From positions 1 through 35,047 of the forward strand of contig NIVC01004785.1 of the NCBI GenBank assembly GCA_002269645.1: 35,047 nucleotides of DNA. The letters run 5' to 3'. This DNA comes from Macrostomum lignano. Lineage: Eukaryota. The notes below the pieces were generated by a model, which was not told the DNA's origin, searched no databases, and saw only the letters and a program-made list of their open reading frames with translations. Both the position numbers and the translations under genes were made by a program. Of the stretch, positions 1 through 35,047 are shown one piece after another (positions within the stretch are counted from its first letter, which is position 1; each line of letters begins with the position of its first letter).

Positions 1-32
1 GATAGGGATTATCCAAATAGAAATTGTTAGTA

Positions 33-826
33 TGGGATTATCGGAGTGGGACAGTAAGTGTTTATCATAACGGATTATCGAGTGGGATAGTGGGATTATC
101 GTAATGAGATTATCGATGGGATAGTTGGGGATTATCGTAATGGGATTATCAGAGTGGGATAGTTGGGGATTATCGTAATGGATTATCGGAGTGGATAGTT
201 GGGGATTATCGTAATGGGATTATCGGAGTGGGATAGTTGGGGATTATCGTAATGGGATTATCGGAGTGGGATAGTTGGGATTATCGTAATGGATTATCGA
301 GTGGGATAGTTGGGGATTATCGTAATGGGATTATCGGAGTGGGATAGTTGGGGATTATCGTAATGGGATTATCGGAGTGGGATAGTTGGGATTATCGTAA
401 TGGGATTATCGGAGTGGGATAGTTGGGGATTATCGTAAATGGGATTATCGGAGTGGGATAGTTGGGGATTATCGTAATGGGATTATCGGAGTGGATAGTT
501 GGGGATTATCGTAATGGGATTATCGGAGTGGGATAGTTGGGGATTATCGTAAATGGATTATCGGAGTGGGATAGTTGGGATTATCGTAATGGGATTATCG
601 GAGTGGGATAGTTGGGGATTATCGTAATGGGATTATCGGAGTGGGATAGTTGGGGATTATCGTAATGGGATTATCGGAGTGGGATAGTTGGGGATTATCG
701 TAATGGGATTATCGGAGTGGGATAGTTGGGGATTATCGTAATAGGATTATCGAAGTGGGATAGTTGGGGATTATCGCAATGGGATTATCGGAGTGGGATA
801 GTAGGAGATTATCGTAATGGGATTAT
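33..826. repeat. 38-bp G-rich minisatellite (GGGATTATCGGAGTGGGATAGTTGGGGATTATCGTAAT)n, about 19-20 copies, in the NFAT5 intron downstream of exon 5
   Basis: Unit read directly with period 38, e.g. 301-338 repeats at 339-376; 1-nt indels in some copies; degenerate at both ends. Confidence 0.97.
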
Positions 827-3391: not shown

Positions 3392-4975
3392 CGAGGGGTA
3401 TTCAATAAGTTTCTGGATGCACGAATTGAGGGTGATGTACACAATTTGGCATAGCAGGTATTATATACATCGTCTTGTGATTATATTTGTGCGATTTCAG
3501 ACAAATTCACTCTATAAAGCCTGTGCTACGCACACGAAAAGTTAGCATACCCTCAAACACTGAGAATTCACAATGGAGCTCAACAGAGGCCATTTGAGAG
3601 CAATGATTTACTATGACTACAAAAGTGGTCTAAGGCAGTATGAGAGCTTTGAGCGACTTCAAGCGGCTTTAGGCAATAAAGCACCTTCCAGGAACACTGT
3701 TTTTGAGTGGTTTGCCACATTTCGACGTGGTCAGCGGAGTCTGGATGATGAAGAGTGCAGCGGCCGGCCCACCTCCGCAGAAAGCGAAGAGAATGTTGCT
3801 GCCATTCGGGCCATGATTAAGGATGATGCCAGGGTAACTGTGACCCAGATAGAGACAGAAGTGGGCATCTCATCGGGAACCATCCGCACGATCCTGCACT
3901 CAAGGCTCAACCTGAGCAAGGTTTCTGCACGTTAGGTGCCTCATGATCTGGTGGAGGAGCAAAGAAGGCTCGGGTGGCTTGGTGCCATGCCATGCTTGAC
4001 AGATTCGATGGTGGCCGCTCAAACTCGGTTTGGGGTCTCGTCAGTGGTACCAAGCCACTACCAAGTCTGGTACCAAGTGGTACCAAGTCTGGATGATGAA
4101 GAGTGCAGCGGCCGGCCCACCTCCGCAGAAAGCGAAGAGAATGTTGCTGCCATTCGGGCCATGATTAAGGATGATGCCAGGGTAACTGTGACCCAGATAG
4201 AGACAGAAGTGGGCATCTCATCGGGAACCATCCGCACGATCCTGCACTCAAGGCTCAACCTGAGCAAGGTTTCTGCACGTTAGGTGCCTCATGATCTGGT
4301 GGAGGAGCAAAGAAGGCTCGGGTGGCTTGGTGCCATGCCATGCTTGACAGATTCGATGGTGGCCGCTCAAACTCGGTTTGGGGTCTCGTCAGTGGTGACG
4401 AATCCTGGATCTGTAGTTTTGACCCAGAGACCAAGCAGCAGTCGATCCAGTGGACACCAGTTGGAGGCGCCCTACCATTGAAGCTGCAGCGAGAGCGCAG
4501 CGTAGCAAAGCAGATGGTGGCCATTTTTGTGATGAAAGCTGATCATCTAGCGACCGTGCCACTTGTGCAGCAACGCACAGTCACTGGCAACTGGTGTACC
4601 AACTGCTGCCTGCCAAAAGTGCTGAGTTGTCTCTCTAGTTGCCACCCAAGGACTCGAGCTCGGAGTGTGCTTCTTCATCAAGACAACCCCCCCCCCAGCC
4701 CAAGAGTCCAGGCAAGTGGTCGAATTCCTGGCTGAAAAACGCATTCAAGAGATCGGCCATTTACCCTACAGCCCAGATCTGACCCCCGTGCGACTTCTTC
4801 GTGTTTCGGCAAATCAAGCAGATGCGTGGCAGTCGTTATTCATGGCTGGAAGCTGCATTCGAGGCCTTCATCAAGCATTTCAAGGGGTGCCAAGTTCATA
4901 GTGGTCTAGCTGCTTCAATAAGTGGTTTGAGGGGATGCAACGGTGCATAGACTCTTCTGGAGAGTACCTTGTGCA
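3392..4975 (+). mobile_element. Mariner (DD34D) DNA transposon, inactive, 3' TIR missing
   Basis: TA at 3390-3391 followed by mariner-type left TIR CGAGGGGTATTCAATAAGTTTCTGGATGCAC; transposase remnant follows; no reverse-complement TIR is seen after the ...SGEY segment near 4960-4975. Confidence 0.9.
3573..4970 (+). pseudogene. Mariner transposase pseudogene
   Basis: HTH region MELNRGHLRAMIYYDYKSG...SRNTVFEWFATFRRG...SGRP; WVPHEL motif mutated to SAR*VPHDL (TGG>TAG); SGDESW, LLHQDN and PYSPDL catalytic motifs spread over shifted frames; 311-bp internal duplication. Confidence 0.93.
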
Positions 4976-5440: not shown

Positions 5441-5995
5441 GGCGCCACACATGTACTCATTCCGGCGCCACACAGTTACTCATTCCGGCGCCACACAGTT
5501 ACTCATTCCGGCGCCACACAGTTACTCATTCCGGCGCCACACAGTTACTCATTCCAGAGCCACCAGATTACCAATTCCGGCGCCACAGTTACTCATTCCG
5601 GCGCCACACAGTTACTCATTCCGGCGCCACACAGTTACTCATTTCGGCGCCACACAGTTACTCATTCCAGAGCCACCAGATTACCAATTCCGGCGCCACA
5701 GTTACTCATTCCGGCGCCACACAGTTACTCATTCCGGCGCCACACAGTTACTCATTCCGGCGCCACACAGTTACTCATTCCAGAGCCACCAGATTACCAA
5801 TTCCGGCGCCACAGTTACTCATTCCGGCGCTACACAGTTACTCATTCCGGCGCTACACAGTTACTCATTCCGGCGCCACACAGTTACTCATTCCGGCGCC
5901 ACACAGTTACTCATTCCAGAGCCACCAGATTACCAATTCCGGCGCCACAGTTACTCATTCCGGCGCTACACAGTTACTCATTCCGGCGCCACATA
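5441..5995. repeat. 23-bp minisatellite (GGCGCCACACAGTTACTCATTCC)n with 113-bp higher-order structure
   Basis: Variant monomer AGAGCCACCAGATTACCAATTCC recurs at 5556, 5669, 5782 and 5918 (spacing 113, 113, 136). Confidence 0.97.
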
Positions 5996-7198: not shown

Positions 7199-7966
7199 GA
7201 TGACAGGGTTGACAGCTCTACCTGAGGCTAATGACAGGGTTGGCAGCTCTACCTGAGGCTAATGACAGGGTTGGCAGCTCTACCTGAGGCTAATGACAGG
7301 GTTGACAGCTCTACCTGAGGCTAATGACAGGGTTGACAGCTCTACTTGAGGCTAATGACAGGGTTGACAGCTCTACCTGAGGCTAATGACAGGGTTGACA
7401 GCTCTACCTGAGGCTAATGACAGGGTTGACAGCTCTACCTGAGGCTAATGACAGGGTTGACAGCTCTACCTGAGGCTAATGACAGGGTTGGCAGCTCTAC
7501 CTGAGGCTAATGACAGGGTTGACAGCTCTACCTGAGGCTAATGACAGGGTTGGCAGCTCTACCTGAGGCTAATGACAGGGTTGACAGCTCTACCTGAGGC
7601 TAATGACAGGGTTGGCAGCTCTACCTGAGGCTAATGACAGGGTTGGCAGCTCTACCTGAGGCTAATGACAGGGTTGACAGCTCTACCTGAGGCTAATGAC
7701 AGGGTTGACAGCTCTACCTGAGGCTAATGACAGGGTTGACAGCTCTACCTGAGGCTAATGACAGGGTTGACAGCTCTACCTGAGGCTAATGACAGGGTTG
7801 ACAGCTCTACCTGAGGCTAATGACAGGGTTGACAGCTCTACCTGAGGCTAATGACTGGGTTGACAGCTCTACCTGAGGCTAATGACTGGGTTGACAGCTC
7901 TACCTGAGGCTAATGACAGGGTTGGCAGCTCTACCTGAGGCTAATGACAGGATGGACAGCTCTACC
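7199..7966. repeat. 31-bp minisatellite (CTAATGACAGGGTTGACAGCTCTACCTGAGG)n, about 25 near-identical copies, at the 5' end of NFAT5 intron 3
   Basis: Period 31 read directly; copies differ mainly by TTGACAG/TTGGCAG. Confidence 0.98.
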
Positions 7967-7992
7967 CAAGAATCTACTAGGAAGCCGCTCAC

Positions 7993-8236
7993 CTGCACAG
8001 TGGGGTAGCCCTGCTGCGACCGATCCTTAACCGAGCCGCGCGAGCCTTCGGTCATGTACCGAGCCCGGTGGTGCTGCTCGGGCTGGGAGACGATTAGCAG
8101 TTCGAATGGGCCGTGCTTCCTCGGATAGCAGTTGAATAGGCTGGGCTTGCCAGACCGGCGCCTATCGCTGCCTGCGTCGCCAGAAAAGTTCGTGTGCACC
8201 GATGCAGGGGAAGAGGTGACCTCGTCTGACCTGCAG
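7993..8236 (-). CDS. NFAT5: NFAT5 coding exon 3 (244 nt), start of the Rel homology domain
   Basis: Encodes ...[66 protein letters not shown] is NFAT5-type (NFATc has GSRGAVKA). Donor CAG/GTGAG at 7992 (phase 0); acceptor cgcAG at 8237 (alternative at 8231), phase 2. Confidence 0.92.
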
Positions 8237-8390
8237 CTGCGATACGGGTGGAGATTCGGATTAAGTGAGGCTGTTTTCAATTGTGACACGGTTGAGTAAA
8301 TTTGAATTTGGCTTATTAATAGAATGCGGAGATTAGGTTAGGAAGGGCTAAAAAAGATAGGATAAAATTTGTTTTAATCTGGTTTTGCTC

Positions 8391-8715
8391 TTGGCCCAGC
8401 AACTGGAGAGGGTGGTCCAGCAACTGAGGATCTGAGAGGATGAGTGGCCCAGCAACTGAGGATCTGAGAGGATGAGTGGCCCAGCAACTGAGGATCTGGA
8501 AGGCTGGACCAGCAACTGAGGATTTGGAAGGCTGGCCCAGCAACAGAGGATTTGGGAGGCTGGCCCAGCAACTGAGGATCTGGGAGGCTGGCCCAGCAAC
8601 TGAGGATCTGAGAGGCTGGCCCAGCAACTACAGAGGATCTGGGAGGCTGGCCCAGCAACTGAGGATCTGGGAGGCTGGCCCAGCAACTGTGGGATCTGGG
8701 AGGCTGACCCAGCAA
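8391..8715. repeat. About 28-bp minisatellite (GGGAGGCTGGCCCAGCAACTGAGGATCT)n filling NFAT5 intron 2
   Basis: About 11 imperfect copies; explains the overlapping spurious ORFs at 8316-8824. Confidence 0.95.
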
Positions 8716-8772
8716 GTACTTCAATCAAAAAACAGTAGCAAGGATTAAGCACTATATGCAAGAGCAGCCAAC

Positions 8773-9259
8773 CTGGACACGCTGCCGTATTCAATAGACG
8801 AAGCCTGCCTGTCTTGGCCGCCACCGAAGCTGGAGCCCGAAGCGGCAGCGGCAGCAGCGGCCGCGGCGGCAGCGGAGTTCCGCCGCTTCAGCAATTCAGA
8901 CCGCAGACTGGACGCTTCGCCAGACAGAATGCCGGGCTCTTCCTCGGATGCCGATCCGAGGAACAACTCGCCGCAGTCGCGTCTAATACTTGACAACTGG
9001 GTGTCCGAATCCACCACGGTTATTGGCGACCGGCTTCGGGCGGGCGACGTGCACGAGGAGCTGGCCGGCGATGACGAGGACGACATGGCAGTGTCGGAGA
9101 CGCGGGCCCGCTTGTACTTGTAGTTGCCGCCGCCGCCGCCGCTGCTGCTACCGCCGCCGGTGGCACCGACGACATCCGGAGGCGGCGCAGACGAAGACGA
9201 TGAAGCTACGGTGATGGCGGAGGCGCTGACTGGCGCCACAAGACACTGGGACGGTTGCG
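8773..9259 (-). CDS. NFAT5: NFAT5 coding exon 2 (487 nt), Ser/Gly/Ala-rich region with basic clusters
   Basis: GC-rich open frame (ORF 8745-9239 extended to the ttttAG acceptor at 9260, phase 1). Donor CAG/GTTGGC at 8772 is phase 2 and matches exon 3. Assignment rests on phase continuity, not homology. Confidence 0.78.
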
Positions 9260-9324: not shown

Positions 9325-9587
9325 TTGGCCACGACTGCCGACCCTAACCTAAATCTAAACCCTAACCTTGTCCTAAACCCTAACACAAGAGTCCTAACCC
9401 TAACTCTAACCTAAACCTCAACACAAAAAGCCTAAACTAAACCCCAACCTAAACTCCAACCTAAACATTAACATAAGAACCTTAACCTAAACCCTAACAT
9501 GAGCCCTAACCTAAACCCTGACACATGAACTTCAACTTATACCCTAACACGAGTGGCCAGGAAGTCATTGGGCCAGTGCGTGGCCAA
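9325..9587. repeat. Degenerate telomere-like (CCTAAC/CCCTAA) tract bracketed by short inverted repeats; possible MITE in NFAT5 intron 1
   Basis: Many CCTAAC/CCTAAA units at 9340-9548; TTGGCCACG (9325-9333) and CGTGGCCAA (9579-9587) form an inverted pair. Confidence 0.55.
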
Positions 9588-9638
9588 AAATATGCATTGT
9601 AAAACCCATTCGCCAACAGCACAAACAATACTTCTCAC

Positions 9639-10479
9639 CTTCTCTAGAGAGAGATATCAGCTGATCTGCAGATGGAAGCTGTTGTTGCTGCATTTGCTGT
9701 TCGGCAGGCTGCTGCTGATGCTGCCAGAGATTCAAAGCAGCTGGCGGTGCAGCATAGCGGCCGATAGCGGCTGAGGTAGAAGAGTCTGTTAAGATTGACC
9801 GGAGAGTCGAGCTGGCAGGCAGAGAGGCTGACACAGTGGAAGGCGTCAATTGGCGCTGCTGTTCAGGAGGCTCGGCCTTGACCTCCAGTTCGGCGATCAG
9901 GGTTTTCAAAAAGCTATCGTTGGCTGCTGGAACGAGACGCTGAGGCTGAAGCAGATGCACCTGCTGCTGCTGCTGCTGATGCTGTTGCTTTAACAAAGCT
10001 AAAATAACCGATTGCATTTGAGCAGTCTGGCTAGCCAAAGCCTGCAACAGGTTGCTCAAGTCTGAAGAGCCGCCGCAGGCGTAAGCCAGCTGACTAGCAG
10101 TGGCCGGCTGCAGTGACAAAGCTGGCTGCTGCTGCTGCTGCTGCTGCGGCTGCTGCTGTTGTTGTTGCTGAAGAATTTGCTGCAGCAGATTGGTTAAGGT
10201 GGAATTGCTAACAACAGGCTGCTCAGATTGGTGAGCTTGCTGAAGCAATGACTGCTGAGACTGTTGCTGTTGCTGCTGCTGCACTGGACTTGCCGCTTGG
10301 ACGCCATTAAGGCTGGACTGTTGAGACTGCGGAGTCTGCGGCTGCTGCTGCTGGTCATTGATAACACTTAGCAGCAGGTCCATTTGCTGCTCGTCCATAG
10401 CACTACTATTAGAAGTTGGTCCACTTAATGAAGTGGCACAAGTGCCATTAGATTGGCTGGTACCTAAATATGGCTGCAT
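9639..10479 (-). CDS. NFAT5: NFAT5 coding exon 1 (841 nt), Gln-rich low-complexity N-terminus
   Basis: ATG at 10479 opens a 280-codon polyQ-rich frame that ends at the strong donor AAG/GTGAGA (9638), phase 1, matching the exon 2 acceptor. An acceptor lies 18 nt upstream of the ATG (exon start 10497), so further upstream exons are possible. Confidence 0.75.
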
Positions 10480-12376: not shown

Positions 12377-13368
12377 ATTACTGCACTCGATAAGCTAAGG
12401 ATTATTGCTCTTGGCAAACCAAGGAATACTGCACTCGATAAGCCAAGGATTATTGCTATTAATAAACCAAGGATTACTGCACTCAATAAACCAAGGACTA
12501 TTGCTATTAATAAACCAAGGATTACTGCACTCAATAAACCAAGGACTATTGCTCTTGGCAAACCAAGGATTACTGCACTCGATAAGCCATGGATTATTGC
12601 TATTAATAAACCAAGGATTACTGCACTCGATAAGCCAAGGATTATTGCTATTAATAAACCAAGGATTACTGCACTCGATAAACCAAGGATTATTGCTATT
12701 AATAAACCAAGGATTATGCACTTGGCAAACCAAGGATTACTGCACTCGATAAGCCAAGGATTATTGCTATTAATAAACCAAGGATTACTGCACTCAATAA
12801 ACCAAGGACTATTGCTATTAATAAACCAAGGATTACTGCACTCGATAAGCCAAGGATTATTGCTATTAATAAACCAAGGATTACTGCACTCGATAAGCCA
12901 AGGATTATTGCTATTAATAAACCAAGGATTACTGCACTCGATAAGCCAAGGATTATTGCTATTAATAAACCAAGGATTACTGCACTCGATAAGGCATGGA
13001 TTATTGCTATTAATAAACCAAGGATTACTGCACTCGATAAGCCAAGGATTATTGCTATTAATAAACCAAGGATTACTGCACTCGATAAGCCAAGGATTAT
13101 TGCTATTAATAAACCATGAATTACTGCACTCGATAAGCCAAGGATTATTGCTATTAATAAACCAAGGATTACTGCACTCGATAAGCCAAGGATTATTGCT
13201 ATTAATAAACCAAGGATTACTGCACTCATAAGCCATGGATTATTGCTATTAATAAACCAAGGATTACTTACTGCACTTGGCAAACCAAGAATTACTGCAC
13301 TCGATAAGCCATGGATTATTGCTATTAATAAACCAAGGATTACTGCACTCGATAGCCAAGGATTACTG
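12377..13368. repeat. 48-bp minisatellite made of two diverged 24-bp monomers (GATTACTGCACTCGATAAGCCAAG / GATTATTGCTATTAATAAACCAAG)
   Basis: About 20 dimers; unit length is a multiple of 3, which produces the repetitive ORFs at 12373-13283. Confidence 0.98.
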
Positions 13369-13412
13369 CGCTTGATAAGCTTGGCTACATGTATAGGATT
13401 ATTTCTATCCAG

Positions 13413-13768: not shown

Positions 13769-13821
13769 TTAGAGAGTAGAGTTTTTTTAATTAAAGCTTT
13801 TTAACGCCAAGACAAAAAAAA

Positions 13822-15690
13822 ATTATGGAAGCGTCATGTAAACAATCATACAAGCGTCATGTAAACAATCATAGAAGCGTCATGTAAAAATCATAGAAGC
13901 GTCATGTAAACAATCATAGAAGCGTCATGTTAAAATCATAAAAGCGTCATGTAAACAATCATACAAGCGTCATGTAAAAAAATCATAGAAGCGTCATGTT
14001 AAAATCATAAAAGCGTCATAAAAAAATCATAGAAGCGTCATGCAAACAATCATAGAAGCGTCATGTTAAAATCATACAAGCGTCATAAAAAATCATAGAA
14101 GCGTCATGTAAACAATCATACAAGCGTCATGTAAACAATCATAGAAGCGTCATATAAACAATCATACAAGCGTCATGTAAACAATCATAGAAGCGTCATG
14201 TAAAAAATCATAGAAGCGTCATGTAAACAATCATAGAAGCGTCATGTAAACAATCATAGAAGCGTCATGTAAAAAATCATAGAAGCGTCATGTAAACAAT
14301 CATAGAAGCGTCATGTAAACAATCATAGAAGCGTCATGAAAAAATCATAGAAGCGTCATGTAAAAATCATAGAAGCGTCATGTAAAAATCATAGAAGCGT
14401 CATGTAAACAATCATAGAAGCGTCATGTTAAAATCATAGAAGCGTCATGTAAACAATCATACAAGCGTCATGTAAACAATCATACAAGCGTCATGTAAAC
14501 AATCATAGAAGCGTCATGTTAAAATCATAAAAGCGTCTTAAAAATCATAGAAGCGTCATGTAAACAATCATAGAAGCGTCATGTAAACAATCATAGAAGC
14601 GTCATGTAAACAATCATAGAAGCGTCATATAAAAATCATAGAAGCGACATGAAAAAATCATAGAAGCGTCATGCAAACAATCATAGAAGCGTCATGAAAA
14701 AATCATAGAAGCGTCATGCAAAAATCATAGAAGCGTCATGTAAAAAATCATAGAAGCGTCATGTAAACAATCATACAAGCGTCATGTAAACAATCATAGA
14801 AGCGTCATGTAAACAATCATAAAAGCGTCATGTAAACAATCATAGAAGCGTCATGTAAACAATCATAGAAGCGTCATGCAAACAATCATAGAAGCGTCAT
14901 GAAAAAATCATAGAAGCGTCATGCAAAAATCATAGAAGCGTCATGTAAAAAATCATAGAAGCGTCATGTAAACAATCATACAAGCGTCATGTAAACAATC
15001 ATAGAAGCGTCATGTAAACAATCATAAAAGCGTCATGTAAACAATCATAAAAGCGTCATGTAAACAATCATAGAAGCGTCATGTAAACAATCATAGAAGC
15101 GTCATGAAAAAATCATAGAAGCGTCATGTAAAAATCATAGAAGCGTCATGTAAAAATCATAGAAGCGTCATGTAAACAATCATAGAAGCGTCATGTTAAA
15201 ATCATAGAAGCGTCATGTAAACAATCATACAAGCGTCATGTAAACAATCATACAAGCGTCATGTAAACAATCATAGAAGCGTCATGTTAAAATCATAAAA
15301 GCGTCTTAAAAATCATAGAAGCGTCATGTAAACAATCATAGAAGCGTCATGTAAACAATCATAGAAGCGTCATGTAAACAATCATAGAAGCGTCATATAA
15401 AAATCATAGAAGCGACATGAAAAAATCATAGAAGCGTCATGCAAACAATCATAGAAGCGTCATGAAAAAATCATAGAAGCGTCATGCAAAAATCATAGAA
15501 GCGTCATGTAAAAAATCATAGAAGCGTCATGTAAACAATCATACAAGCGTCATGTAAACAATCATAGAAGCGTCATGTAAACAATCATAAAAGCGTCATG
15601 TAAACAATCATAAAAGCGTCATGTAAACAAGCATAGAAGCGTCATGTTAACATAGAAGCGTCATGAAAAAATCATAGAAGCCTCATATAA
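13822..15690. repeat. About 1.9-kb 23-bp satellite (ATCATAGAAGCGTCATGTAAACA)n, about 80 copies
   Basis: Period 22-24 read directly; rare variants recur at a 768-bp offset; degenerates towards 15780. Confidence 0.98.
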
Positions 15691-15904
15691 AAACTAATGA
15701 AAGTGTGTCATTTAAAAAATTAAGAAGCATCATGGAAGAATAAAAGAAGCGTAACGTAAAAATCAAAAGAAGCGTCATGTCAGACATGTCAGTCATAAAA
15801 ATTAAATGAAGCTATAGTGCTGTGCTGGGGAGAATCACTGAGACTTCAAGGCTCACAGAGAATAACTGAGATTACAGGGGGGTTTCTGAGATGTTAAAGC
15901 AAAA

Positions 15905-23679: not shown

Positions 23680-23965
23680 CACCACACCTGCCTTGGCGGC
23701 TGAGTTGTCGCTGTTGCACATCCGTTAATTGCAGCTATTCGGCGCATCTAAGAAGGCTGCGTACATGTACATGTACGGCTGTTCAGTCCAAGGACTGGGG
23801 AAGGGGGGTCGCCACACACACCCTCAATTACCCAAGCTAGCTGGTACCCATTTTACACAGCTGGGTGAAGCAATGCAGAGTTCAGTATCTCGCTGAAGGA
23901 CACAAATTATTCCGAGTGGGCTCATCGAACCTCCAACCTTTCAGTCGTGATTCCAACGCTCTAAC
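23680..23965 (-). mobile_element. CORE-type SINE family B, copy 2
   Basis: CAGCTATT.G.CGCATCT.AGAAGGCTGCGTAC...CCCATTTTACA.CAGCTGGGTGAA...GGACACA...CATCGAACC is colinear with 2632-2880. Confidence 0.75.
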
Positions 23966-24523: not shown

Positions 24524-24820
24524 CATACATGTGCAACAGTCGGCCAAGTCGGCCGATCCGGCCGACCGATTTGGCGGCCAACCAAGGAAGTCGCAAAAAT
24601 GCCCACCCGAAAAAACACCAAGTAGTAGTACTAAGTAGCTGACGAGACATCTTGGCTTTTAAAGACAGTCATAGTTACTCCTGCCGTTTACCCAAAGTTG
24701 CGTTAATTTTGCTTTCGGGTTTTTTTACATGTAAGTCGCATTTTTGGCCAAAAACTACGTCGCATTTTTGTTAAAACTAAGTCGCACGGCCGACCGAATT
24801 TTGGAGGTTGCGCATGTATG
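24524..24820. mobile_element. hAT MITE, 297 bp, with perfect 8-bp TSD
   Basis: TIRs CATACATGTGCAAC / GTTGCGCATGTATG (13/14); TSD ACACGATC at 24516-24523 and 24821-24828; internal GTCGC and CGGCCGA repeats. Confidence 0.92.
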
Positions 24821-26064
24821 ACACGATCACTGCGATCACATCGTCGCCATTGCCTCAGGCTCATCGACTCGCTCGCTCTATCATCTATAATCTATCTTAT
24901 TGTTGCGTAGCCGCCCAGTGCATTCCTTACGGATTCAGCAAATACTCTGGCCCATCTCTATTAAATCATCAAGTGCTACCGCTATACAAAATTGTCTCTG
25001 CTGTAGTTGTCTTCGTCAGTTGATTTCGAGTCTGCCGGTTAATCGTCACAATCCCAGAAAATATATTATAACGATTATAATCAATATGGAAAAGATCATA
25101 GCTACCAAAAAATTACAGAAAAAGAGCAGACTGCCCTGTACTGACTTTTGCATCGGGAAAAATTGACTTTCAACAACAACAAAAACTAAATTGAAGTACA
25201 TATACAAGCTAATATACATGTAAGTGGGCGGCTAATACCAAATGCAAAACTTGCAAAGTTCATTTTACTTACTCTAGTAAAAGTTCAAAAAACAAATAAA
25301 GAATATAAATGAATGATTGCTTGCGAGAAATTGTGGAAGACAAATTATCGGGTTTTTCGTCATAATTGGAACAAAATAAAAGCGGGTCATGACATATTTT
25401 GTTATAATTGCACCGAACTGGTCGCAAAAAGGGCAGCTGATGGAAGAGCTGTAAAGACTCTTAACTATTTGTTATAAAAAGTTTCTTGATCTGCTACAAT
25501 GACCACACGGACGCGTTGCTTTAAAATGCATCATCCAAATTGGCCCAGCCATTAATTAACAAGTCTTTAATAGTAAATTTACGATTTCTTACTTACTATC
25601 CGTACTTTGGGCGATAACATGAAAATTAGCTAGCATGCGTTTGGTTCAATGCACAGATACTAGAATAATTAGATGGGCCATCTCAGCACATTTGGGCTAC
25701 TTTCAGTTCAGTAGCAAGTTAAACAGAAGCATTTTGATGTATTTTAAAGCCAAGACTCATTTATTGGCTCTTACCCCCCCCCCCTCAGCATAAACCCTCT
25801 CCAACCGTGCCTTTCCACACTATAACTTCTTTCTATATATATAACGAAGTGTTCCTTAATGGTCATTGCTTCCAACGTAATGCCAACTTCCATGTGTATA
25901 TTGCAGTATAAATGGCTGAAAAGTTCCCATCCTGCAAATGCATTTTCAAGCGAAATCAGGCTCACTCAATTTTGCAGTGCGACCGTCTCACTATCAGTGG
26001 TCCTTGATCTTCGACTCATTGTCATAAATCAGCCAGAAGACGCTTCTCGACTGAACTGACTCAC

Positions 26065-26317
26065 ATCCTCTCCGACCTGCTCCTCCTGCTCGGCCATGTC
26101 AGCCACTGGCTGCTGATCCTGAAGCTCTGACAGCTCAGCAGCTGCGGCCACGGCGCGTCTGGCTAACAGGGTGAGCAGATGGCGCCTAATTGGCGCCGGA
26201 TCGTCAGCGGGCAGCAGCCGAATGGAGCAGCCACGAACCGGCAAGATCAAAGCCGGCGGCGACTCAGACGGTCGCAACGGCGGCGGCTGCGGCAGTTTCT
26301 GGCAAAGAAGTGCTGCC
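26065..26317 (-). CDS. XRCC4-superfamily (PAXX-like) gene, coding exon 2
   Basis: Acceptor ctccctacacAG (phase 2) gives (R)AALLCQKLP...ALILPVRGCSIRLLPADDPAPIRRHLLTLLARRAVAAAAELSELQDQQ...GED. Donor GAT/GTGAGT at 26064 is phase 0; alternatively the frame reads through to a stop at 26029. Confidence 0.72.
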
Positions 26318-26380
26318 CTGTGTAGGGAGTTTATTGAAGGGGATATGAAAATTTACCACTGGTAATAATAAAATTAATAA

Positions 26381-26650
26381 TTGATTACACCTGCCCTAAT
26401 AGGCAGATGTGCAACCGACAGCTCAGTCGCAGCTATTGCGCAGCGCATCTGAAGGCTGCGTACGGCTGTTCGGTCCATAGACTGGGGGGGGGGGGGGTTC
26501 GCCACACACTTTCAAATACCCCAGCTAATGCTGGCACCCATTTTACAGCTGGGTGAACTGAAGCAATGCAGAGTAAAGTGTCTTGCTTAAGGACACAGAT
26601 TGTTCCGAGTGTCAAGAATCGAACCACCAACCTTCAAGTCGTGGACAAAT
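26381..26650 (-). mobile_element. CORE-type SINE family B, copy 3
   Basis: TTGATTACACC...CAGCTATTGCGCAGCGCATCTGAAGGCTGCGTACGG...CCCATTTTACAGCTGGGTGAACTGAAGCAATGCAGAGT.AAGTGTCTTGC...GAATCGAACC; very similar to copy 1. Confidence 0.8.
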
Positions 26651-28835
26651 TTGAGTAATCTGCAAACTTCTGCGGGTCAACTGTGTAAAGGCTAGGGTAG
26701 GGTAGAGACGTAGGTATTTTATTTGAGTTTGAACTTTTGTGATTGTGACTGACCTATGAGTGCCCGCCTGCGTACAGCCTCCGCGCGCTTGTATGTGCTC
26801 AGAAATCAGCGGAATGGGCAGAATTTGCCCCGGCATTTACACGTAAGAGATTATTGCTTAACCTCAATAATGGAGACATTAAGGAAAGGTAACAAAGGTC
26901 ATTTTATATTGAAATAATCTCACCTGCGGCGCTAAAATTGCACAAAAATATTACAGGCAAATGAGAATCGTGCCTGAACACTATAGTATCAGCGATGTGT
27001 TGTGCTAGTTAAACAGTTAACTGGTTTGTAAATCTTGACTTCTGTAAAGAATAGCATTGTAAGAGCTGCTTTCATTTGATTTTCTCAGCTACCAATTTTT
27101 TTACAAGCAGCTTTAGTGTATGAAACGTGTTTTTTGCAAAGAGCGATTTCTACTCCAGAAAGGACAAAAACAAAATCCTTCTAGTGTAAACAGAGATTTT
27201 CTAATCAAAGCATACAAGCAGCTAGTCCGCGACTGATAAAACTGAGACTGAAAATTCTAACATTAAACTTTTTGGCACAGTTTTTTAGCTAGCTCAAAAC
27301 TCTGCTTCGATCACAAGCCGATGGCATTCGTTTGACAATCTAGCATATGGTCCACGATTCTGGGACTGATCGTGCTCCTCCGCTGCAAATGAAGCATTGC
27401 TCTCGTCCCCACTGCTTGTGACAGTCTGTCTAAATGAAAACCTAGGGATGAAACTGTAGCTCGTTCAGCTGCTATGAACCAAATAGATGCTTGTTGGACT
27501 AACAAATAGCCGATAGCTTCAATCAAAGATCATATATACACAAGATGGGCCACTCATTAACCACTTATGTGGCCATAGAAGCTAATGTTAAAAATTTTGC
27601 AACTCGTGACAGCTCAAAAATCAACTAGCCACTGAACTCAATTTAATCAGTAGTCTCTGCAGTGCATGCATCAGTCTTAGTTTGATGGAGTAGCTTTTTA
27701 TTAAATTCATTTCCCTATGTCCCTAAGCTACTGAAATCAAAATTTAAGCAACCCATGTTGGCTTTTGTCGCACAAGTGACGAAAAACAGCGGTCGGACTT
27801 TCCCTATTGCTGCAATACCAAGGGGCCTATCTAGAGAATATAAGATCTATGGTATATATGGACCAAATAGCTCCATTACTATGGCAAACATATCTTGGAT
27901 ACCAAAATTGGTTTTGCTGTTTATGATCTAATTCTTCATTGAATCAGAAGCCAGATACCCTAGTATATTTAACTCATTTTGTTTAAATAATAGTTTTTCT
28001 ATGGCCGCCAACGTTTAAAGCCAACAGTACTGAACACACTCAGAGAGATATAGCTCGTAAGTTAAGAGGAGAAATGAAGAAGAGTCAGAAATATTCGCTA
28101 CTAAGTCTACATTTTCTGCAAAGTCATTTAATTCTACCAAGCACCTTAAAGAAATGCGAGCGAATGATAGTTAGAGCTACATGTACGTTTAAGGAGTTGC
28201 ATGAGGCGAAAAAAACAAACTTGGGAGTTCCTGCAGCGGACCTGCAATGATGCATGTTTCTGAAAGAGATGGACGAGTTCACCAAGTTGGATCTAGCGGC
28301 TGATGAAACTTTTCATCCTGGAGATGTCGAGGAGCATCTAGGCGGATCCGGAATTGAGGAGTGCAATACAATTGCGTCAATGATGCTATATCGGCTAGCG
28401 AGGGTAAGGCTTCGGGTTAGAGAAATCTTCGTCCGTTTCAAAATCTATCTACATGTAGCAGGACCGGTGCAAGTGAGATGCAAATAACCTTAGAGAAATC
28501 AGATTTTTCTCCACCGAAAATGTCTACCTTTCGAAAACCTTATTCTCGAGAGCGTTATACCTTTTTACCGGCCAGCTCCAGTTTGTATCTAAAAAATCGA
28601 GCGTAGCGCGCGTCATACTACTTTACTTTATTCTATGATCGTCAGTCTTAATAGTGATCGAAATATTCTTTAGTTTAGCTCTTTAGGCTGGCACAGTTGC
28701 CGCAGCCAACACAGATTGCCAGCTACATGTACATGCATGTGTAATTTATAAATCCAATACACTAATAGCCTACAAGTAACAAAATATCCTAAAAAACCGT
28801 TGAAAATCAAGAAACTACTGAGAACGTGCACGCAC

Positions 28836-29056
28836 CTCACAGCGCTAAATACGCTAGAATCGTCTTCCAGGCCCAATTTGACGCGCAGTTCGGCCAGCTT
28901 GGCCCGGTCAATTTTGGCGCAATAGACGGCATCGCCGTCGGACAGAGACAGCCAGAGCGCGGAGTCGCGCAGCTCGCCAATTAGACTGAACCCGCCGCCA
29001 GCTGGCAAGAGCAGCGAGTCAAGGCCGGACAGCTTTACCAGGCGGTCAAATGACAT
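28836..29056 (-). CDS. XRCC4-superfamily (PAXX-like) gene, coding exon 1
   Basis: ATG at 29056 gives MSFDRLVKL...LWLSLSDGDAVYCAKIDRAKLAELRVKLGLEDDSSVFSAVR; donor AG/GTGCGT at 28835 (phase 2) matches exon 2. Resembles the PAXX head (LYVTDAAELWSTCFTPDSLAALKARFGLSAAEDITPRFRAAC) and the XRCC4 head (ITLTDGHSAW...ELRKALL). Alignment by eye only. Confidence 0.72.
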
Positions 29057-29195
29057 TTTAATGAGTATCGATGCGGTGTAGTATCCGCGCTGACTGCAAG
29101 TTGAACCAAAATTTTCTCAAAATCAGATTTTAAAGGCTGTGCACACACGGGTGTACTGTGTGTATATTGATTTGGTTTGCAGTGATGATTTTAAA

Positions 29196-29470
29196 TGATT
29201 TGATCTGGTATAATTTGCTCTCGTACGATTTGATCTTGTACGACTTGATCTTGTATGATTTGATCTTGCATAAATTGATCTTCTAAGGTTTTTTCTTGTA
29301 TGATTTGATCTTGTTCGGTTTGTTCTTCTTTAATTTGATATTGTACGACTTGATCTTGCATGATTTGATGTTGTACGATTTGATCTTTTATGATTTGATG
29401 TAGTACGATTTGATCTTGTACGACTGGATCTCGTAAGACTTGATCTTGTATGATTTGATGCTGTATGATC
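29196..29470. repeat. 15-bp minisatellite (ATTTGATCTTGTACG)n, about 18 degenerate copies, between CIAO2B and the PAXX-like gene
   Basis: Period 15 read directly. Confidence 0.93.
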
Positions 29471-30067: not shown

Positions 30068-30217
30068 TCAGTGCTCGCGCATTTCACCCAGACACTGGTT
30101 GACAACAGCCAGAAGGTGGGTATTCTCCAGAGCGGCCGCCACGCGCTCTTTATCGGCTAGCTGTTTGTTAATCGCCTCCTCAGAGTTGTGCGTGCCCGGA
30201 GCGATTCGGACGCCTAC
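30068..30217 (-). CDS. CIAO2B: CIAO2B/FAM96B/MIP18 coding exon 2 (terminal; not in the ORF track on this strand)
   Basis: Acceptor ccccaaccaacAG (phase 0); encodes [49 protein letters not shown], matching human [39 protein letters not shown]. Confidence 0.97.
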
Positions 30218-30661: not shown

Positions 30662-30976
30662 CTTGAAGCGCGAGGGCAGCGACCGGATCAGCTTGACCCG
30701 AATGCTCAGACCGATGAGAGTCGCTTGGCTGCAGTGCGGGATGGTCGGCGTGAATTCTATGCTAATCCGATTGGCCGGATCATCAACCTGAACGGCAGCC
30801 TCGCTGACAACGCCGAGCTCTTCTAGCGTTAGCGGATGCTCCGGATCGTTGATAACCCGGATTAAGTCGAATACTTCGCGAGCATCGAACTGATCAGCAA
30901 GGTCTTCGTTAAGCATGCCAGGCGTTATTGGACGCTCGGTAGTCCTGGCGTACACAACTGGGTTGGCATTGTCCAT
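30662..30976 (-). CDS. CIAO2B: CIAO2B/FAM96B/MIP18 (cytosolic Fe-S assembly component) coding exon 1; full protein 154 aa
   Basis: MDNANPVVY...[27 protein letters not shown]...[31 protein letters not shown]; [11 protein letters not shown] and LSI(R/K)VKL are CIAO2B- rather than CIAO2A-type. Donor AAG/GTTTGT at 30661 (phase 0). An in-frame upstream ATG exists at 31027. Confidence 0.97.
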
Positions 30977-31032: not shown

Positions 31033-31999
31033 ACAAGCTGAGCAATATCTTGTGAGTCCCTGACAAGCTGAGCAATACCTTGTGAGTCCCTGACAATCTG
31101 AGCAATCTCTTGTGAGTCCCTGACAATCTCAGCAATCTCTTGTGAGTCCCTGACAATCTGAGCAATATCTTGTGAGTCCCTGACAAGCTGAGCAATATCT
31201 TGTGAGTCCCTGACAATCGGATCAATCTCTTGTGACTTTGTGAGTTCTCGACAATCTGAGCAATCTCTTGTGAGTCCCTGACAATCGGAGCAACACCTTG
31301 TGAGTCCCTGACAATCTGAGCAATCTCTTGTGAGTCCCTGACAATCTGAGCAATATATTGTGAGTCCCTGACAATCGGAGCAATATCTTGTGAGTCCCTG
31401 ACAATCTGAGCAATCTCTTGTGAGTCCCTGACAATCTGAGCAATATATTGTGAGTCCCTGACAATCGGAGCAATATCTTGTGAGTCTCTGACAATCTGAG
31501 CAATCTCTTGTGACTTTGTGAGTTCTCGACAATCTGAGCAATATCTTGTGAGTCCCTGACAATCTGAGCAATATTGTGAGTCCCTGACAATCGGAGCAAT
31601 ATATTGTGAGTCCCTGACAATCTGAGCAATCTCTTGTGAGTCCCTGACAATCGGAGCAATATATTGTGAGTCCCTGACAATCTGAGCAATCTCTTGTGAG
31701 TCCCTGACAATCTGGGCAATATATTGTGAGTTCTCGACAATCTGAGCAATCTCTTGTGACTGAGTTCTCGACAATCTGAGCAATCTCTTGTGACTTTGTG
31801 AGTTCCCGACAATCTGAGCAATCTCTTGTGACTTTGTGAGTTCTCGACAATCTGAGCAATCTCTTGTGAGTCCCTGACAATCTGAGCAATATATTGTGAG
31901 TTCCCAACAATCTGAGCAATCTCTTGTGAATTTGTGAGGTCCCGACAATCTGAGCAATCTCTTGTGAGTCCCTGACAATCCGAGCAATCTCTCGTGAGT
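31033..31999. repeat. 30-bp minisatellite (TCTGAGCAATCTCTTGTGAGTCCCTGACAA)n, about 31 copies, immediately 5' of CIAO2B
   Basis: Period 30 with some 39-bp and shorter variant units; generates the long repeat ORFs at 30644-31987. Confidence 0.98.
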
Positions 32000-33240: not shown

Positions 33241-33297
33241 ATGTCTACTTTTGACAACCCATTTGCTGAACCATCATCAGATAGCAATCCATTCATG
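33241..33297 (+). CDS. SCAMP: SCAMP (secretory carrier membrane protein) first coding exon
   Basis: MSTFDNPFAEPSSDSNPFM with two NPF motifs, then canonical donor ATG/GTAAGT (phase 0); parallels the SCAMP1 N-terminus MSDFDSNPFADPDLNNPFK. Later exons were not found in the window. Confidence 0.8.
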
Positions 33298-35047
33298 GTA
33301 AGTGCCTTAGCCTAAGTGAAAAAGTATATAACGTCTATCTATCCTGCTTTAACTATCTGGGAAGTCTTGACCATATAATAACATTGTCATTGATTAGGAG
33401 TGAGTAGGACTAGCTATAGTTGAAATGTAGACAAAGCCTTTTCACAATAGGCCTCTAGTGGGCTTTGGGGTTGGAATTTTTTAATGCTTAGTGTTGTATC
33501 AATTAATTACAGGCTTCTAAGTTTAGTATATGGTGGGTAGGTGATCATAGGGTGTAGGTCACATAGGCAAAAAGATGGCAATCTTCAAGTTTCGTTTGTT
33601 TAATTATTTCCGGAATTATTTCGCCCTCTATTCAAGGGTGGTTGGAATTAAACGAACGAAACTTGAAGATACCCAAAAAGACATTAAGGCAAAAGTCATT
33701 TTGGAGAAAGTTTGGCAAGTCATTTTGGAGAAAGCCATACTATGGGCATGGCATGGGGCACAAGCTTCAATGCATGCTTCAATGTATATACAAGCTATAT
33801 TCAGGATTTAATTTAACAATTAGGCCTTATCTAGATAGATGTTAATTTATGCAATGTAGGCCCAATAAAAGTTTTATTTTATGCCGCTGGCTTTTATATG
33901 TATCTAAAATGGGGTTGGGGGTTGCATACTTGTGGCTATATGCCAAATGCAATGAGGTTGCATATATATTTGTCTTTGCATATTTTTAAGATTATATATT
34001 TGTGTATCATTCACATACTGCAGCTCCAATGAAAATGTGGGGATGGTGCACTGTATGGTATGCTAGACTTAAATAACTGAGTTATGATTATATTCAATGT
34101 TAGGCACTAGTCTATTAGTGTTAATAAACATTAATCCATTAATAAACATTAATAAGTGTTAAGATTTTTCATTAGGGCCTAATGTTAATGGACTACCATT
34201 AAGATTTTTAAACAAATTTACTAACAAATTTGCATTAATAACTTTGTGAGTTAATAACAAATTCATCATTAATGTTAATGGAAATGTCAATGACCAAAGA
34301 TGCAAAGAAAAAACAAAAATATAAGTTTAAAAAAGTTGCAAAATTATAGATGAGTTTTCAAGTTTCAAATAAAAAAGTTACTACTTTAATTATATCATAT
34401 ATGCTTAATTTAGTAGTATTATATAAACAAGTTTTTTAAATTATTATTTATTACTTTTTAGCTTGTAAATCCTTTAGATGACCTCTATGTTTTGCTAAAA
34501 AGGGGAAAGCAAAGACAGTGTATTATAAAAATGTGCAAGGTTTCTATATTTTTGTGTTAACTTTAACAAATTAAAATTAACAATTATCAGTTAACTTTCA
34601 GTTAACTTAATGAAGTTAAAAGTTGATAAGTTAATATTTTTTAACACTAATGCTCTTCCCATTAATGGAAATTAAGATTTTCATTAATGGTACCCAACAC
34701 TGATTGTATTAAGGGAGACTACACAGTTGGCTTTTTAGATCTTATAGAAGCATTCATTAGGCCTAATCATTAACTTTTTACTTGAATTGATTGTTTTCAT
34801 TTTTAAAGTCTAAAAATATAAAAAAGTAAAAAAGTAACAGTTTATCATGTACTAATAAATAAATTATTTGTTATAGTCAATTGCCATAATTAAATATAAG
34901 GTTAGGCTCCTACTACTTTACCATAAAGTAATAATATGACTAGGTAATTTTATCTACAATATATCTCTATTCAATTTGAATTTTCGCATTGATATATATA
35001 TTAGGAATTCTTGAAATAATATCAGTTTTGCATGTATAAAGCATGAA

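What the first reader, a model, noticed from the sequence alone, without database searches (positions are those of the whole stretch)
26065..29056. Unannotated two-exon XRCC4-superfamily gene, most like PAXX, in an invertebrate
Seen: two short minus-strand ORFs join through phase-matched splice sites (AG/gtgcgt ... cacag/G) into one protein of about 158 aa or more. Inference from known sequences: LSLSDG..VYCAKID...LAELRVKLGL...VFSAVRAALL and the later helix (DPAPIRRHLLTLLARRA...ELSELQ) fit the XRCC4/XLF/PAXX head plus a short coiled coil. The L.ELR.KLGL segment and a coil broken early by Pro favour PAXX over XRCC4. PAXX is studied almost only in vertebrates and is not recognised in fly, nematode or budding yeast, so a divergent invertebrate orthologue would be informative and easy to miss by BLAST.
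Basis: partly seen in the sequence, partly recalled or inferred. Interest (0 to 1): 0.7.

Follow-up and report, generated by a model that had tools for sequence, protein, structure and literature searches.

The report
Divergent flatworm-type PAXX-like DNA-repair gene
The two minus-strand reading frames form a real two-exon gene for a small DNA-repair scaffold protein of the XRCC4/PAXX family, very diverged and apparently without the tail that normally anchors PAXX to Ku; it adds a member to a known family.

Summary
Exon 1 (29056..28836, minus) and exon 2 (26317..26029) join through GTG AG|gtgcgt ... cacag|G GCA into an intact 169-aa ORF.

- **Homologue:** an exhaustive HMMER scan of 1.84 billion proteins found one true relative, Macrostomum lignano hypothetical protein PAA94624.1 (E 1.4e-8, 37% identity). 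It aligns without a break across the junction, and its gene has an intron at the same position and phase.
- **Shared intron:** rat PAXX has a phase-2 intron in the homologous Arg codon (SRFR/AAC against SAVR/AAL here).
- **Fold:** AlphaFold2 gives a beta-strand, helix-turn-helix, beta-hairpin head and a roughly 28-residue stalk. All significant Foldseek PDB hits belong to the XRCC4 superfamily.
- **Which family:** Foldseek does not separate PAXX from XRCC4. Profile-profile comparison does: PAXX scores 37.3 against a shuffle null of 13.8±2.3, while XRCC4 and XLF score at null level.
- **Ku-binding motif:** the flatworm homologue has a PAXX-type motif (PGMSLLNP..RKRPAARGV). The window's gene does not, and no such peptide exists in any frame of the window.

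PAXX orthologues are already reported across non-insect, non-nematode animals, plants and ciliates, so this is a new member of a known kind. Whether the motif loss is real needs transcript data.

The parts
28836..29056 (-). Coding exon 1 (Met1 to the first two bases of Arg74). It encodes the N-terminal strands and the helix-turn-helix of the head, including LSLSDGDAVY and LAELRVKLGL.
   Evidence: Searches give the sequence and ORF; tblastn of P0001 residues 7-80 maps to 29059..28838. One search gives strands 24-30, 33-39 and 44-49 and helices 51-61 and 66-79. G+C is 0.61.
26318..28835 (-). Intron of 2518 nt, GT...AG, phase 2, inside the Arg74 codon. It contains a SINE-like repeat at 26429-26643.
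   Evidence: The M. lignano gene has an intron at the same position and phase (ATT GG|gtatgc...acacag|G GCC), and so does rat PAXX intron 3 (TTC AG|gtaagt...ccttag|G GCA, aligned). Repeat copies are shown.
26029..26317 (-). Coding exon 2: a Pro-rich loop, a beta hairpin (ALILPV / CSIRLLP), the stalk helix (PIRRHLLTLLARRAVAAAAELSELQ) and an acidic tail, ending in the stop codon TGA at 26031..26029.
   Evidence: tblastn of P0001 residues 88-139 maps to 26289..26131. One search gives strands 97-101 and 104-110 and helix 114-141.
26059..26067 (-). It could be an alternative 5' splice site, but no downstream exon was found.
   Evidence: One search gives the sequence. Searches found no Ku-binding-motif-like or otherwise conserved coding segment downstream.
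29094..29100 (-). cttgcag acceptor-like site 38 nt upstream of the ATG. It may be a 5'-UTR or trans-splice acceptor (inference only).
   Evidence: The M. lignano gene has ttttcag 22 nt upstream of its ATG, where its annotated 'partial' CDS begins.
25760..25765 (-). AATAAA, a candidate polyadenylation signal about 265 nt downstream of the stop codon.
   Evidence: pattern scan only; not evidence of use.

Best explanation
This is a real two-exon protein-coding gene for a 169-aa member of the XRCC4 superfamily that descends from PAXX. It has a small beta-sandwich and helix-turn-helix head followed by a roughly 28-residue stalk helix. In PAXX, XRCC4 and XLF this architecture forms a homodimeric scaffold at DNA double-strand breaks. 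The gene is homologous to Macrostomum lignano Mlig032148 (PAA94624.1 and two near-identical copies), either as an orthologue or as an old paralogue. The window very probably comes from a macrostomid flatworm. The M. lignano protein has the full PAXX layout: head, short coil, disordered linker and a C-terminal PAXX-type Ku-binding motif. The window's protein stops after an acidic tail and has no such motif. The likely mechanism is therefore a dimeric PAXX-like scaffold that cannot dock on Ku70 in the canonical way. The gene, its splice junction, the fold class and the PAXX affinity are shown by computation. Dimerisation, a role in end joining and expression are inferred.
For: 1. **Homologue across the junction.** The only homologue among 1.84 billion proteins aligns continuously across the junction at E 1.4e-8.
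2. **Conserved intron.** The position and phase are shared with the M. lignano gene and with rat PAXX intron 3. Rat has SRFR/AAC and the window has SAVR/AAL, with AG|G GCA in both. hhalign pairs Arg74-Ala-Ala here with human Arg77-Ala-Ala.
3. **Predicted fold.** The AF2 model has pLDDT 69.5 and pTM 0.56 and reads 3 strands, HTH, 2 strands, helix 114-141. All 30 Foldseek PDB hits at E<=1e-3 are XRCC4 chains. A. thaliana PAXX, CCDC61, human PAXX and XLF follow.
4. **PAXX rather than XRCC4 or XLF.** The flatworm profile against a 72-sequence mammalian PAXX alignment gives hhalign probability 66%, E 5.6e-5 and score 37.3, colinear over residues 30-198 against 33-199 of 204. Column-shuffle controls give 13.8±2.3 (maximum 21.7, n=100). 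The head-only profile, with the window's protein first, scores 25.1 against 12.8±2.5. Human XRCC4 scores 15.8-17.0 and XLF 10-12, which is null level.
5. **Structural fit of the PAXX chains.** They have the highest target-normalised TM-scores (0.50-0.57 for the P0001 model), the lowest rmsd (4.8-5.7 Å) and the highest identity (19-21%).
6. **Ku-binding motif in the homologue.** P0001 has PGMSLLNPMQRKRPAARGVVL against mammalian PGESLINPGFKSKKPAGGVDF. Pfam PAXX PF15384 matches profile positions 160-190 of 194 at E 0.0042.
7. **Microsynteny.** A SCAMP-like first exon lies head-to-head upstream of the gene in both loci.
8. **Coding constraint.** About 63% amino-acid divergence has accumulated with no frameshift or stop and only codon-sized indels.
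Against: - The protein gets no Pfam hit at all, even at E<=10. The word-index search found nothing.
- The Pfam PAXX hit of the M. lignano homologue is below the gathering score (17.1 against 25 bits) and covers only the motif.
- Foldseek E-values rank XRCC4 above PAXX.
- The AF2 models rest on a two-sequence alignment and have only moderate confidence.
- The window's protein lacks the Ku-binding motif that defines PAXX function.
- No transcript evidence was available, so the junction, the 3' end and expression are unverified.
- The source organism is inferred, not known.
Confidence: 0.8

Rival explanations
1. The gene has the PAXX identity described above but is a decaying or truncated duplicate: a pseudogene, or a copy that has recently lost function. 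The loss of the linker and Ku-binding motif would mark its inactivation. The functional PAXX of this genome would be an Mlig032148-type gene elsewhere.
For: The C-terminus is about 75 residues shorter than all three M. lignano copies, which all keep the motif. No motif exists anywhere in the window. Nothing more than 50% identical to this protein is present among about 15 billion predicted proteins, which would fit an unannotated or unexpressed locus. The window shares at least five repeat families with the M. lignano locus, one at 94.7% nucleotide identity. That suggests the same or a closely related genome, and therefore paralogy.
Against: The 169-codon ORF is intact. The start codon, both splice sites and the structural core residues are conserved despite about 63% divergence, with no frameshift. 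That pattern implies coding constraint over most of the gene's history. An AATAAA follows the stop codon.
Confidence: 0.15
2. The gene model is incomplete at its 3' end. Exon 2 would be spliced at GAT|GTGAGT (26065/26064) to one or more downstream exons that encode a linker and a diverged Ku-binding motif, as in mammals, where the motif is split by the last intron.
For: There is a near-consensus donor just before the stop. Rat PAXX splits its motif as ...NPGFK|SKKPAGGVDFDET.
Against: The M. lignano gene encodes everything after the shared intron in one exon. An HMM of the motif (mammals plus P0001), run with all filters off over all six frames, found no match scoring above zero (best E 4.7, score -4.0). 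Regular-expression scans and a very permissive tblastn found nothing either. Downstream G+C islands are repeats (MITE-like and SINE-like).
Confidence: 0.1
3. It is the XRCC4 orthologue (the DNA ligase IV partner), or an XLF orthologue, rather than a PAXX relative.
For: Foldseek ranks human XRCC4 chains first for both models (best E 5.9e-5 and 6.9e-5).
Against: The predicted stalk is only about 28-35 residues and is followed by disorder. That is too short for the ligase IV-binding coiled coil of XRCC4 (from my knowledge of XRCC4, not tested here), and there is no XLF-type fold-back helix. hhalign scores against XRCC4 (15.8-17.0) and XLF (10-12) are at the shuffle-null level, while PAXX scores 25-37. 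The homologue's tail matches the PAXX motif, not the XLF C-terminus. PAXX chains give a better TMt, rmsd and identity.
Confidence: 0.04
4. The two ORFs are adjacent by chance and there is no gene.
For: None beyond the absence of Pfam and word-index hits.
Against: A homologue spans the junction at E 1.4e-8 in a library of 1.84 billion proteins. The intron position and phase are conserved in two other species. The predicted fold is coherent.
Confidence: 0.01

Closest known systems
Macrostomum lignano hypothetical protein BOX15_Mlig032148g3 (PAA94624.1; near-identical copies PAA94534.1 and PAA89085.1)
   Same: It is the only detectable sequence homologue: 37% identity over residues 1-137, E 1.4e-8. 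It has the same two-exon structure with the intron at the same position and phase, the same predicted head and short stalk, the same Pro-rich segment before the hairpin, and a SCAMP-like gene head-to-head upstream.
   Different: The M. lignano protein continues for about 75 more residues: a Gly/Ala linker, a PAXX-type Ku-binding motif and an acidic/basic tail. The window's protein ends in a short acidic tail without them. It is named only 'hypothetical protein' and passes no Pfam threshold.
Vertebrate PAXX (C9orf142/XLS; PDB 3WTD, 3WTF, 4WJA, 7ZWA; Pfam PF15384)
   Same: It has an XRCC4-like head plus a coiled coil of about 30 residues followed by a disordered tail. The profile-profile alignment is colinear and includes LxxLxxR/KhGL (LAALKARFGL against LAELRVKLGL) and the stalk (APRLRALTLGLAKR against APIRRHLLTLLARR). 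A phase-2 intron sits in the homologous Arg codon followed by Ala-Ala.
   Different: Identity is about 20% and there is no Pfam hit. Mammalian genes have 7 coding exons against 2 here. One head strand appears to be replaced by a Pro-rich loop (inferred from the model). The window's protein has no Ku-binding motif.
Arabidopsis thaliana PAXX (PDB 8P26), and the proposed PAXX orthologues C. elegans NHJ-1 and ciliate Die5p
   Same: These are precedents for highly diverged PAXX orthologues recognised mainly by fold and by the C-terminal motif (bioRxiv 10.1101/2023.05.26.542399). The 8P26 chains are among the lowest-rmsd structural matches to the model, at 4.6-5.0 Å with TMt 0.47-0.48.
   Different: No sequence-level comparison with them was done here. 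According to that paper, plant PAXX keeps a C-terminal Ku-binding site and also binds XRCC4.
Human XRCC4 (PDB 1FU1, 1IK9) and XLF (2QM4, 2R9A)
   Same: They share the superfamily fold. XRCC4 chains give the best Foldseek E-values (5.9e-5, TMq 0.48).
   Different: XRCC4 has a long stalk that binds ligase IV, and XLF has a fold-back helical region and its own basic C-terminal motif. Neither is predicted here. hhalign scores are at null level.

Membership tests
XRCC4 superfamily (XRCC4/XLF/PAXX/SAS-6/CCDC61) | N-terminal head: a beta-sandwich with an inserted helix-turn-helix, followed directly by a long alpha-helical stalk | tested here: met
   The AF2 model (pLDDT 69.5, pTM 0.56) has E24-30, E33-39, E44-49, H51-61, H66-79, E97-101, E104-110 and H114-141. 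All Foldseek PDB hits at E<=1e-3 are XRCC4, followed by PAXX, CCDC61 and XLF. The P0001 model gives the same result. Confidence is moderate because the alignment has only two sequences, and one strand fewer is predicted than in the solved heads.
PAXX (Pfam PF15384) | Sequence match to the curated family profile at its gathering score | tested here: not met
   hmmscan of the window's protein found no family even at E<=10. The M. lignano homologue scores 17.1 bits against a cut-off of 25, on the motif only.
PAXX | Remote sequence homology specific to PAXX rather than to its paralogues | tested here: met
   hhalign against a 72-sequence mammalian PAXX alignment scores 37.3 (probability 66%, E 5.6e-5) for the P0001-first profile and 25.1 for the head-only profile. 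Column-shuffle nulls are 13.8±2.3 and 12.8±2.5, and 0 of 100 shuffles reach the observed score. XRCC4 scores 15.8-17.0 and XLF 10-12. Caveats: the PAXX alignment is mammal-only, and XRCC4 and XLF were single sequences.
PAXX | Short coiled-coil stalk (about 30 residues) followed by a disordered C-terminal region, with no XLF-type fold-back and no long ligase IV-binding stalk | tested here: met
   The model has helix 114-141 and then low confidence. In P0001 the helix is 117-151 and the tail from 164 has pLDDT below 50. This is prediction only.
PAXX | C-terminal Ku-binding motif (PGxSL[IL]NP....K[KR]PA..GV.[FL]) that docks on Ku70 | tested here: not met
   The motif is absent from the 169-aa product. 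A motif HMM (all filters off, all six frames of the 35-kb window) found no match scoring above zero, and regular-expression and tblastn scans found nothing. It is present in all three M. lignano copies.
PAXX | Gene structure: a phase-2 intron in the Arg codon at the end of the second head helix (vertebrate intron 3) | tested here: met
   Rat has TTC AG|gt...ag|G GCA (SRFR/AAC). The window has GTG AG|gt...ag|G GCA (SAVR/AAL). M. lignano has ATT GG|gt...ag|G GCC. The residues are paired by hhalign. Whether XRCC4 or XLF genes share this intron was not tested.
PAXX | Homodimerisation, Ku70 binding, and a contribution to non-homologous end joining that is redundant with XLF | not testable with these tools
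   These are biochemical and genetic properties. No multimer prediction or expression data were available.

The most novel reading that the evidence does not exclude
Macrostomid flatworms may carry two anciently diverged PAXX-lineage genes next to SCAMP paralogues. One is canonical and has the Ku-binding motif (Mlig032148). The other, this gene, keeps a constrained head and stalk but has lost the Ku anchor. It would then be a Ku-independent or modulatory scaffold, for example one that heterodimerises with or competes against canonical PAXX, or one that contacts XRCC4 or XLF through its head, as plant PAXX contacts XRCC4.
Probability: 0.2. Interest if true: 0.5.

Novelty: new member of a known kind. 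Interest (0 to 1): 0.3.

Why it matters
It shows that flatworm genomes encode a PAXX-lineage end-joining factor so diverged that Pfam and BLAST-type searches miss it. In M. lignano it is labelled only 'hypothetical protein'. That fills a gap in the NHEJ gene set of a group used to study stem cells, regeneration and radiation responses. The conserved phase-2 intron is an independent marker of orthology across about 80% sequence divergence. If the missing Ku-binding motif is real, it would be a natural separation-of-function variant of PAXX. The family and its wide distribution outside vertebrates are already described, so the conceptual gain is modest.

Tried and rejected
- **Direct searches.** Pfam hmmscan, phmmer against PDB sequences (only chance C/EBP hits at E about 1), a profile of the two flatworm proteins against PDB sequences (nothing below E 0.85) and the word-index search all found nothing. 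This family is beyond the reach of sequence-to-sequence and profile-to-sequence searches.
- **False hit.** The second phmmer hit, P0002 (711 aa, E 2.7e-4), is a repetitive bacterial-type surface protein that matches 'AAWLSLSP' five times. I rejected it as a low-complexity coincidence.
- **Search with human PAXX.** Only mammalian sequences were listed, so no invertebrate PAXX sequences were available to bridge the profiles.
- **Search for a 3' exon with a Ku-binding motif.** Stop-to-stop segments, regular expressions, a motif HMM over six frames and G+C islands were all checked. The islands at 23.0-24.7 kb are repeats. The alternative frame of exon 2 reads 'GRAGGAGRRG', which resembles the M. 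lignano linker only through GAG/CAG-rich composition, so I rejected it.
- **Rfam scan of the window.** It found nothing. The 262-bp segment that is 94.7% identical to M. lignano has terminal inverted repeats and is better read as a MITE than as an RNA gene.
- **Identifying the source contig.** A permitted look-up with a contiguous 304-aa ORF found nothing, and Callithrix PAXX was not on record.
- **dN/dS.** I did not attempt it: with two lineages at 37% identity, synonymous sites are saturated.
Full report
**1. Observation**

On the minus strand an ATG at 29056 opens a reading frame that meets a good donor at 28836/28835 (GCT GTG AG|GTGCGT). A second frame starts behind an acceptor at 26318/26317 (ccctacacag|G GCA GCA). 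Joined, they are in phase: the intron is phase 2, and AG|G rebuilds Arg74. The ATG is the first in-frame ATG after an upstream stop. Both exons are sharp G+C islands (0.61 and 0.55-0.67) in a 0.35-0.45 background.

**2. Is it more than chance?**

Direct searches were empty. There was no Pfam family even at E<=10, only chance hits among PDB sequences, and nothing in the word-indexed 5.8-billion-protein search.

The exhaustive phmmer scan of 1.84 billion cluster representatives found one real relative, P0001 (E 1.4e-8, 37% identity). It aligns with query residues 1-137 in a single stretch that crosses the proposed junction without a gap. A second hit, P0002, is a repetitive surface protein matching a short low-complexity word, and I discarded it.

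P0001 is Macrostomum lignano 'hypothetical protein BOX15_Mlig032148g3' (PAA94624.1). Two copies about 98% identical to it lie on other contigs.

Its gene (locus L001) also has two exons. Its single intron lies at the aligned position and in the same phase: ATT GG|gtatgc...acacag|G GCC, that is NLIG/ASL against SAVR/AAL here. Its annotated 'partial' N-terminus is read-through from a ttttcag acceptor, and its real start Met aligns with the Met used here. Together these results validate the start codon, the junction and the reading frames. A chance join is excluded.

**3. What the protein is**

*Fold.* AlphaFold2, given the two-sequence alignment, produced a moderately confident model (pLDDT 69.5, pTM 0.56). 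It has three strands, a helix-turn-helix (51-61, 66-79), a Pro-rich loop, a beta hairpin (97-101, 104-110) and a stalk helix 114-141, followed by disorder.

Foldseek against the PDB returned only XRCC4-superfamily proteins at the top:
- Human XRCC4 chains came first (best E 5.9e-5, TMq 0.48).
- A. thaliana PAXX 8P26 followed (E 5e-3, rmsd 4.6-5.0 Å).
- CCDC61, human PAXX 8BH3_M (E 0.017, 21% identity) and XLF came next.

The M. lignano protein gave the same picture. XRCC4 led by E-value. Human PAXX (3WTF, 3WTD, 4WJA) had the best target-normalised TM-scores (0.50-0.57), the lowest rmsd (4.8-5.7 Å) and the highest identity (19-20%). Membership of the XRCC4 superfamily is therefore supported, but fold search alone does not decide between PAXX and XRCC4.

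*Which family.* Four independent lines point to PAXX.

(a) Profile-profile comparison. I verified the human PAXX, XRCC4 and XLF sequences against PDB chains and built a 72-sequence mammalian PAXX alignment. The scores were:

| hhalign comparison | Score | Note |
|---|---|---|
| Flatworm profile (P0001 first) vs PAXX alignment | 37.3 | probability 66%, E 5.6e-5; residues 30-198 against 33-199 of 204 |
| Column-shuffled PAXX alignments (n=100) | 13.8±2.3 | maximum 21.7 |
| Head-only profile (window's protein first, no motif) vs PAXX | 25.1 | – |
| Column-shuffled control for the head-only profile | 12.8±2.5 | maximum 21.1 |
| Flatworm profiles vs XRCC4 | 15.8-17.0 | null level |
| Flatworm profiles vs XLF | 10-12 | null level |

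(b) Motif in the homologue. The M. lignano homologue has PGMSLLNPMQRKRPAARGVVL where mammals have PGESLINPGFKSKKPAGGVDF. Pfam PAXX matches exactly this stretch (profile positions 160-190 of 194) at E 0.0042. That is below the gathering score but specific.

(c) Architecture. Both flatworm proteins are predicted as a head, a stalk of about 30 residues and a disordered tail. There is no long XRCC4-type stalk and no XLF-type fold-back.

(d) Gene structure. I mapped rat PAXX onto its locus (L002) and found seven coding exons. Intron 3 is phase 2 inside Arg79 (TTC AG|gtaagt...ccttag|G GCA GCC, that is SRFR/AAC). hhalign pairs that Arg-Ala-Ala with Arg74-Ala75-Ala76 of the window's protein. Rat, M. 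lignano and the window therefore share the intron position and phase. Rat and the window even share the same split codon, AG|G, followed by GCA. I could not check whether XRCC4 or XLF genes share this intron.

**4. The missing tail**

All three M. lignano copies encode a Gly/Ala linker, the Ku-binding motif and an acidic/basic tail in exon 2. The window's exon 2 instead runs ...AAAAELSELQDQQPVADMAEQEEQVGEDVSQFSREASSG and stops.

I searched for a displaced or separately spliced motif in five ways:
- stop-to-stop segments downstream;
- a very permissive tblastn;
- regular expressions;
- a motif HMM from mammals plus P0001, run unfiltered over all six frames of the window;
- inspection of downstream G+C islands, which turned out to be repeats.

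None of these found the motif. An AATAAA lies about 265 nt after the stop. The most economical model is a two-exon gene for a 169-aa product without the motif. A missed 3' exon (about 10%) or a decaying duplicate (about 15%) remain possible without transcript data. Against decay, about 63% amino-acid divergence has accumulated with no frameshift or stop, and the structural core is conserved.

**5. Source and context**

The window is eukaryotic and rich in repeats and minisatellites.

It shares at least five repeat families with the 22-kb M. lignano locus at 68-95% nucleotide identity. These include a 262-bp MITE-like element at 94.7% and Mos1/mariner remnants at 73-75%. Unique sequence around the gene does not align at all.

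A SCAMP-like first coding exon (MSTFDNPFAEPSSDSNPF...) lies head-to-head upstream of the PAXX-like gene in both loci, at 62% identity. A CIAO2B-like gene lies between them only in the window.

I infer that the source is a Macrostomum or a close relative. The shared young repeats sit oddly with only 37-62% protein identity. That tension leaves open whether the two loci are fast-evolving orthologues or old paralogues within the genus.

**6. Mechanism**

By homology, the protein should form a head-and-stalk homodimer of the kind that XRCC4, XLF and PAXX use to scaffold end-joining complexes. Canonical PAXX is tethered to Ku70 by its C-terminal motif and acts redundantly with XLF (established knowledge; PMC4339890 and bioRxiv 10.1101/2023.05.26.542399).

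The M. lignano protein has all the parts needed for that mechanism. The window's protein has the scaffold but not the tether. It is therefore either Ku-independent or modulatory, or on its way to being lost. Computation shows the gene structure, the homologue, the fold class and the affinity to PAXX. Dimerisation, partners, role and expression are inferred.

**7. Novelty**

Xing et al. 2015 stated that PAXX is absent from most invertebrates. Later work reports orthologues throughout Filozoa except insects and nematodes. It also reports plant and ciliate (Die5p) orthologues and proposes C. elegans NHJ-1 as one.

A literature search listed no paper that mentions PAXX together with flatworms.

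The finding is therefore a new, very diverged member of a known family, found in a phylum where it had not been named. It may also be a variant without the Ku-binding motif. Interest is modest (0.3).

Noticed in passing
window 30068-30217 and 30662-30976 (minus strand): A two-exon CIAO2B/FAM96B (MIP18)-like gene lies immediately upstream of the PAXX-like gene on the same strand, spliced RFK|[10 protein letters not shown]. Pfam FeS_assembly_P matches at E 6.6e-12. A 30-bp minisatellite of about 31 copies (31033-31999) abuts its 5' end. The M. lignano locus L001 has no counterpart.
   Followed up: partly
window 33241-33312 (+); L001 4258-4326 (-): A SCAMP-like first coding exon with NPF repeats (MSTFDNPFAEPSSDSNPF...) lies head-to-head with the PAXX-like gene in both the window and the M. 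lignano locus, at 62% amino-acid identity. This looks like conserved microsynteny. No Pfam hit was obtained for this short exon.
   Followed up: partly
window 24560-24821; L001 9294-9554: A 262-bp element is 94.7% identical between the window and M. lignano and is bounded by inverted repeats (CATG[T/C]GCAAC ... GTTGCGCATG), so it resembles a MITE. It is far more similar than the coding genes of the two loci (37-62% amino-acid identity). That mismatch is unexplained unless the two loci are paralogues in one genome or genus, or the element moved recently.
   Followed up: partly
window 3565-4971 (+): Mos1/mariner-type transposase remnants are present (HTH_48, E 6.4e-11). They contain a perfect (100%) 348-bp tandem duplication at 3738-4396, which is either a very recent event or an assembly artefact. 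They are 73-75% identical to a copy in L001 (2201-3253).
   Followed up: partly
window 7903-8289 (minus), with ORFs at 8745-9239 and 9565-10479 (minus): An exon encodes the start of a Rel-homology DNA-binding domain (RHD_DNA_bind, E 3.2e-9; the peptide resembles NFAT). Upstream of it lie Ser/Ala-rich and Gln-rich ORFs that may be exons of the same transcription-factor gene. Minisatellites at 7200-7966 and 8403-8715 overlap or flank it.
   Followed up: no
window 26429-26643 (inside the intron), 2653-2849, 23731-23949: There are three copies of a SINE-like repeat of about 200 bp (75-86% identical to each other). One sits inside the intron of the PAXX-like gene, next to a run of 13 C on the gene strand.
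   Followed up: no
window 32-826, 5441-5993, 12390-13378, 13817-15780, 29195-29469: The density of minisatellites is unusually high: the scan listed 20 tandem-repeat rows, some describing the same array. One array has 87 copies of a 23-bp unit (13817-15780). These arrays produce most of the long spurious ORFs in the window.
   Followed up: no
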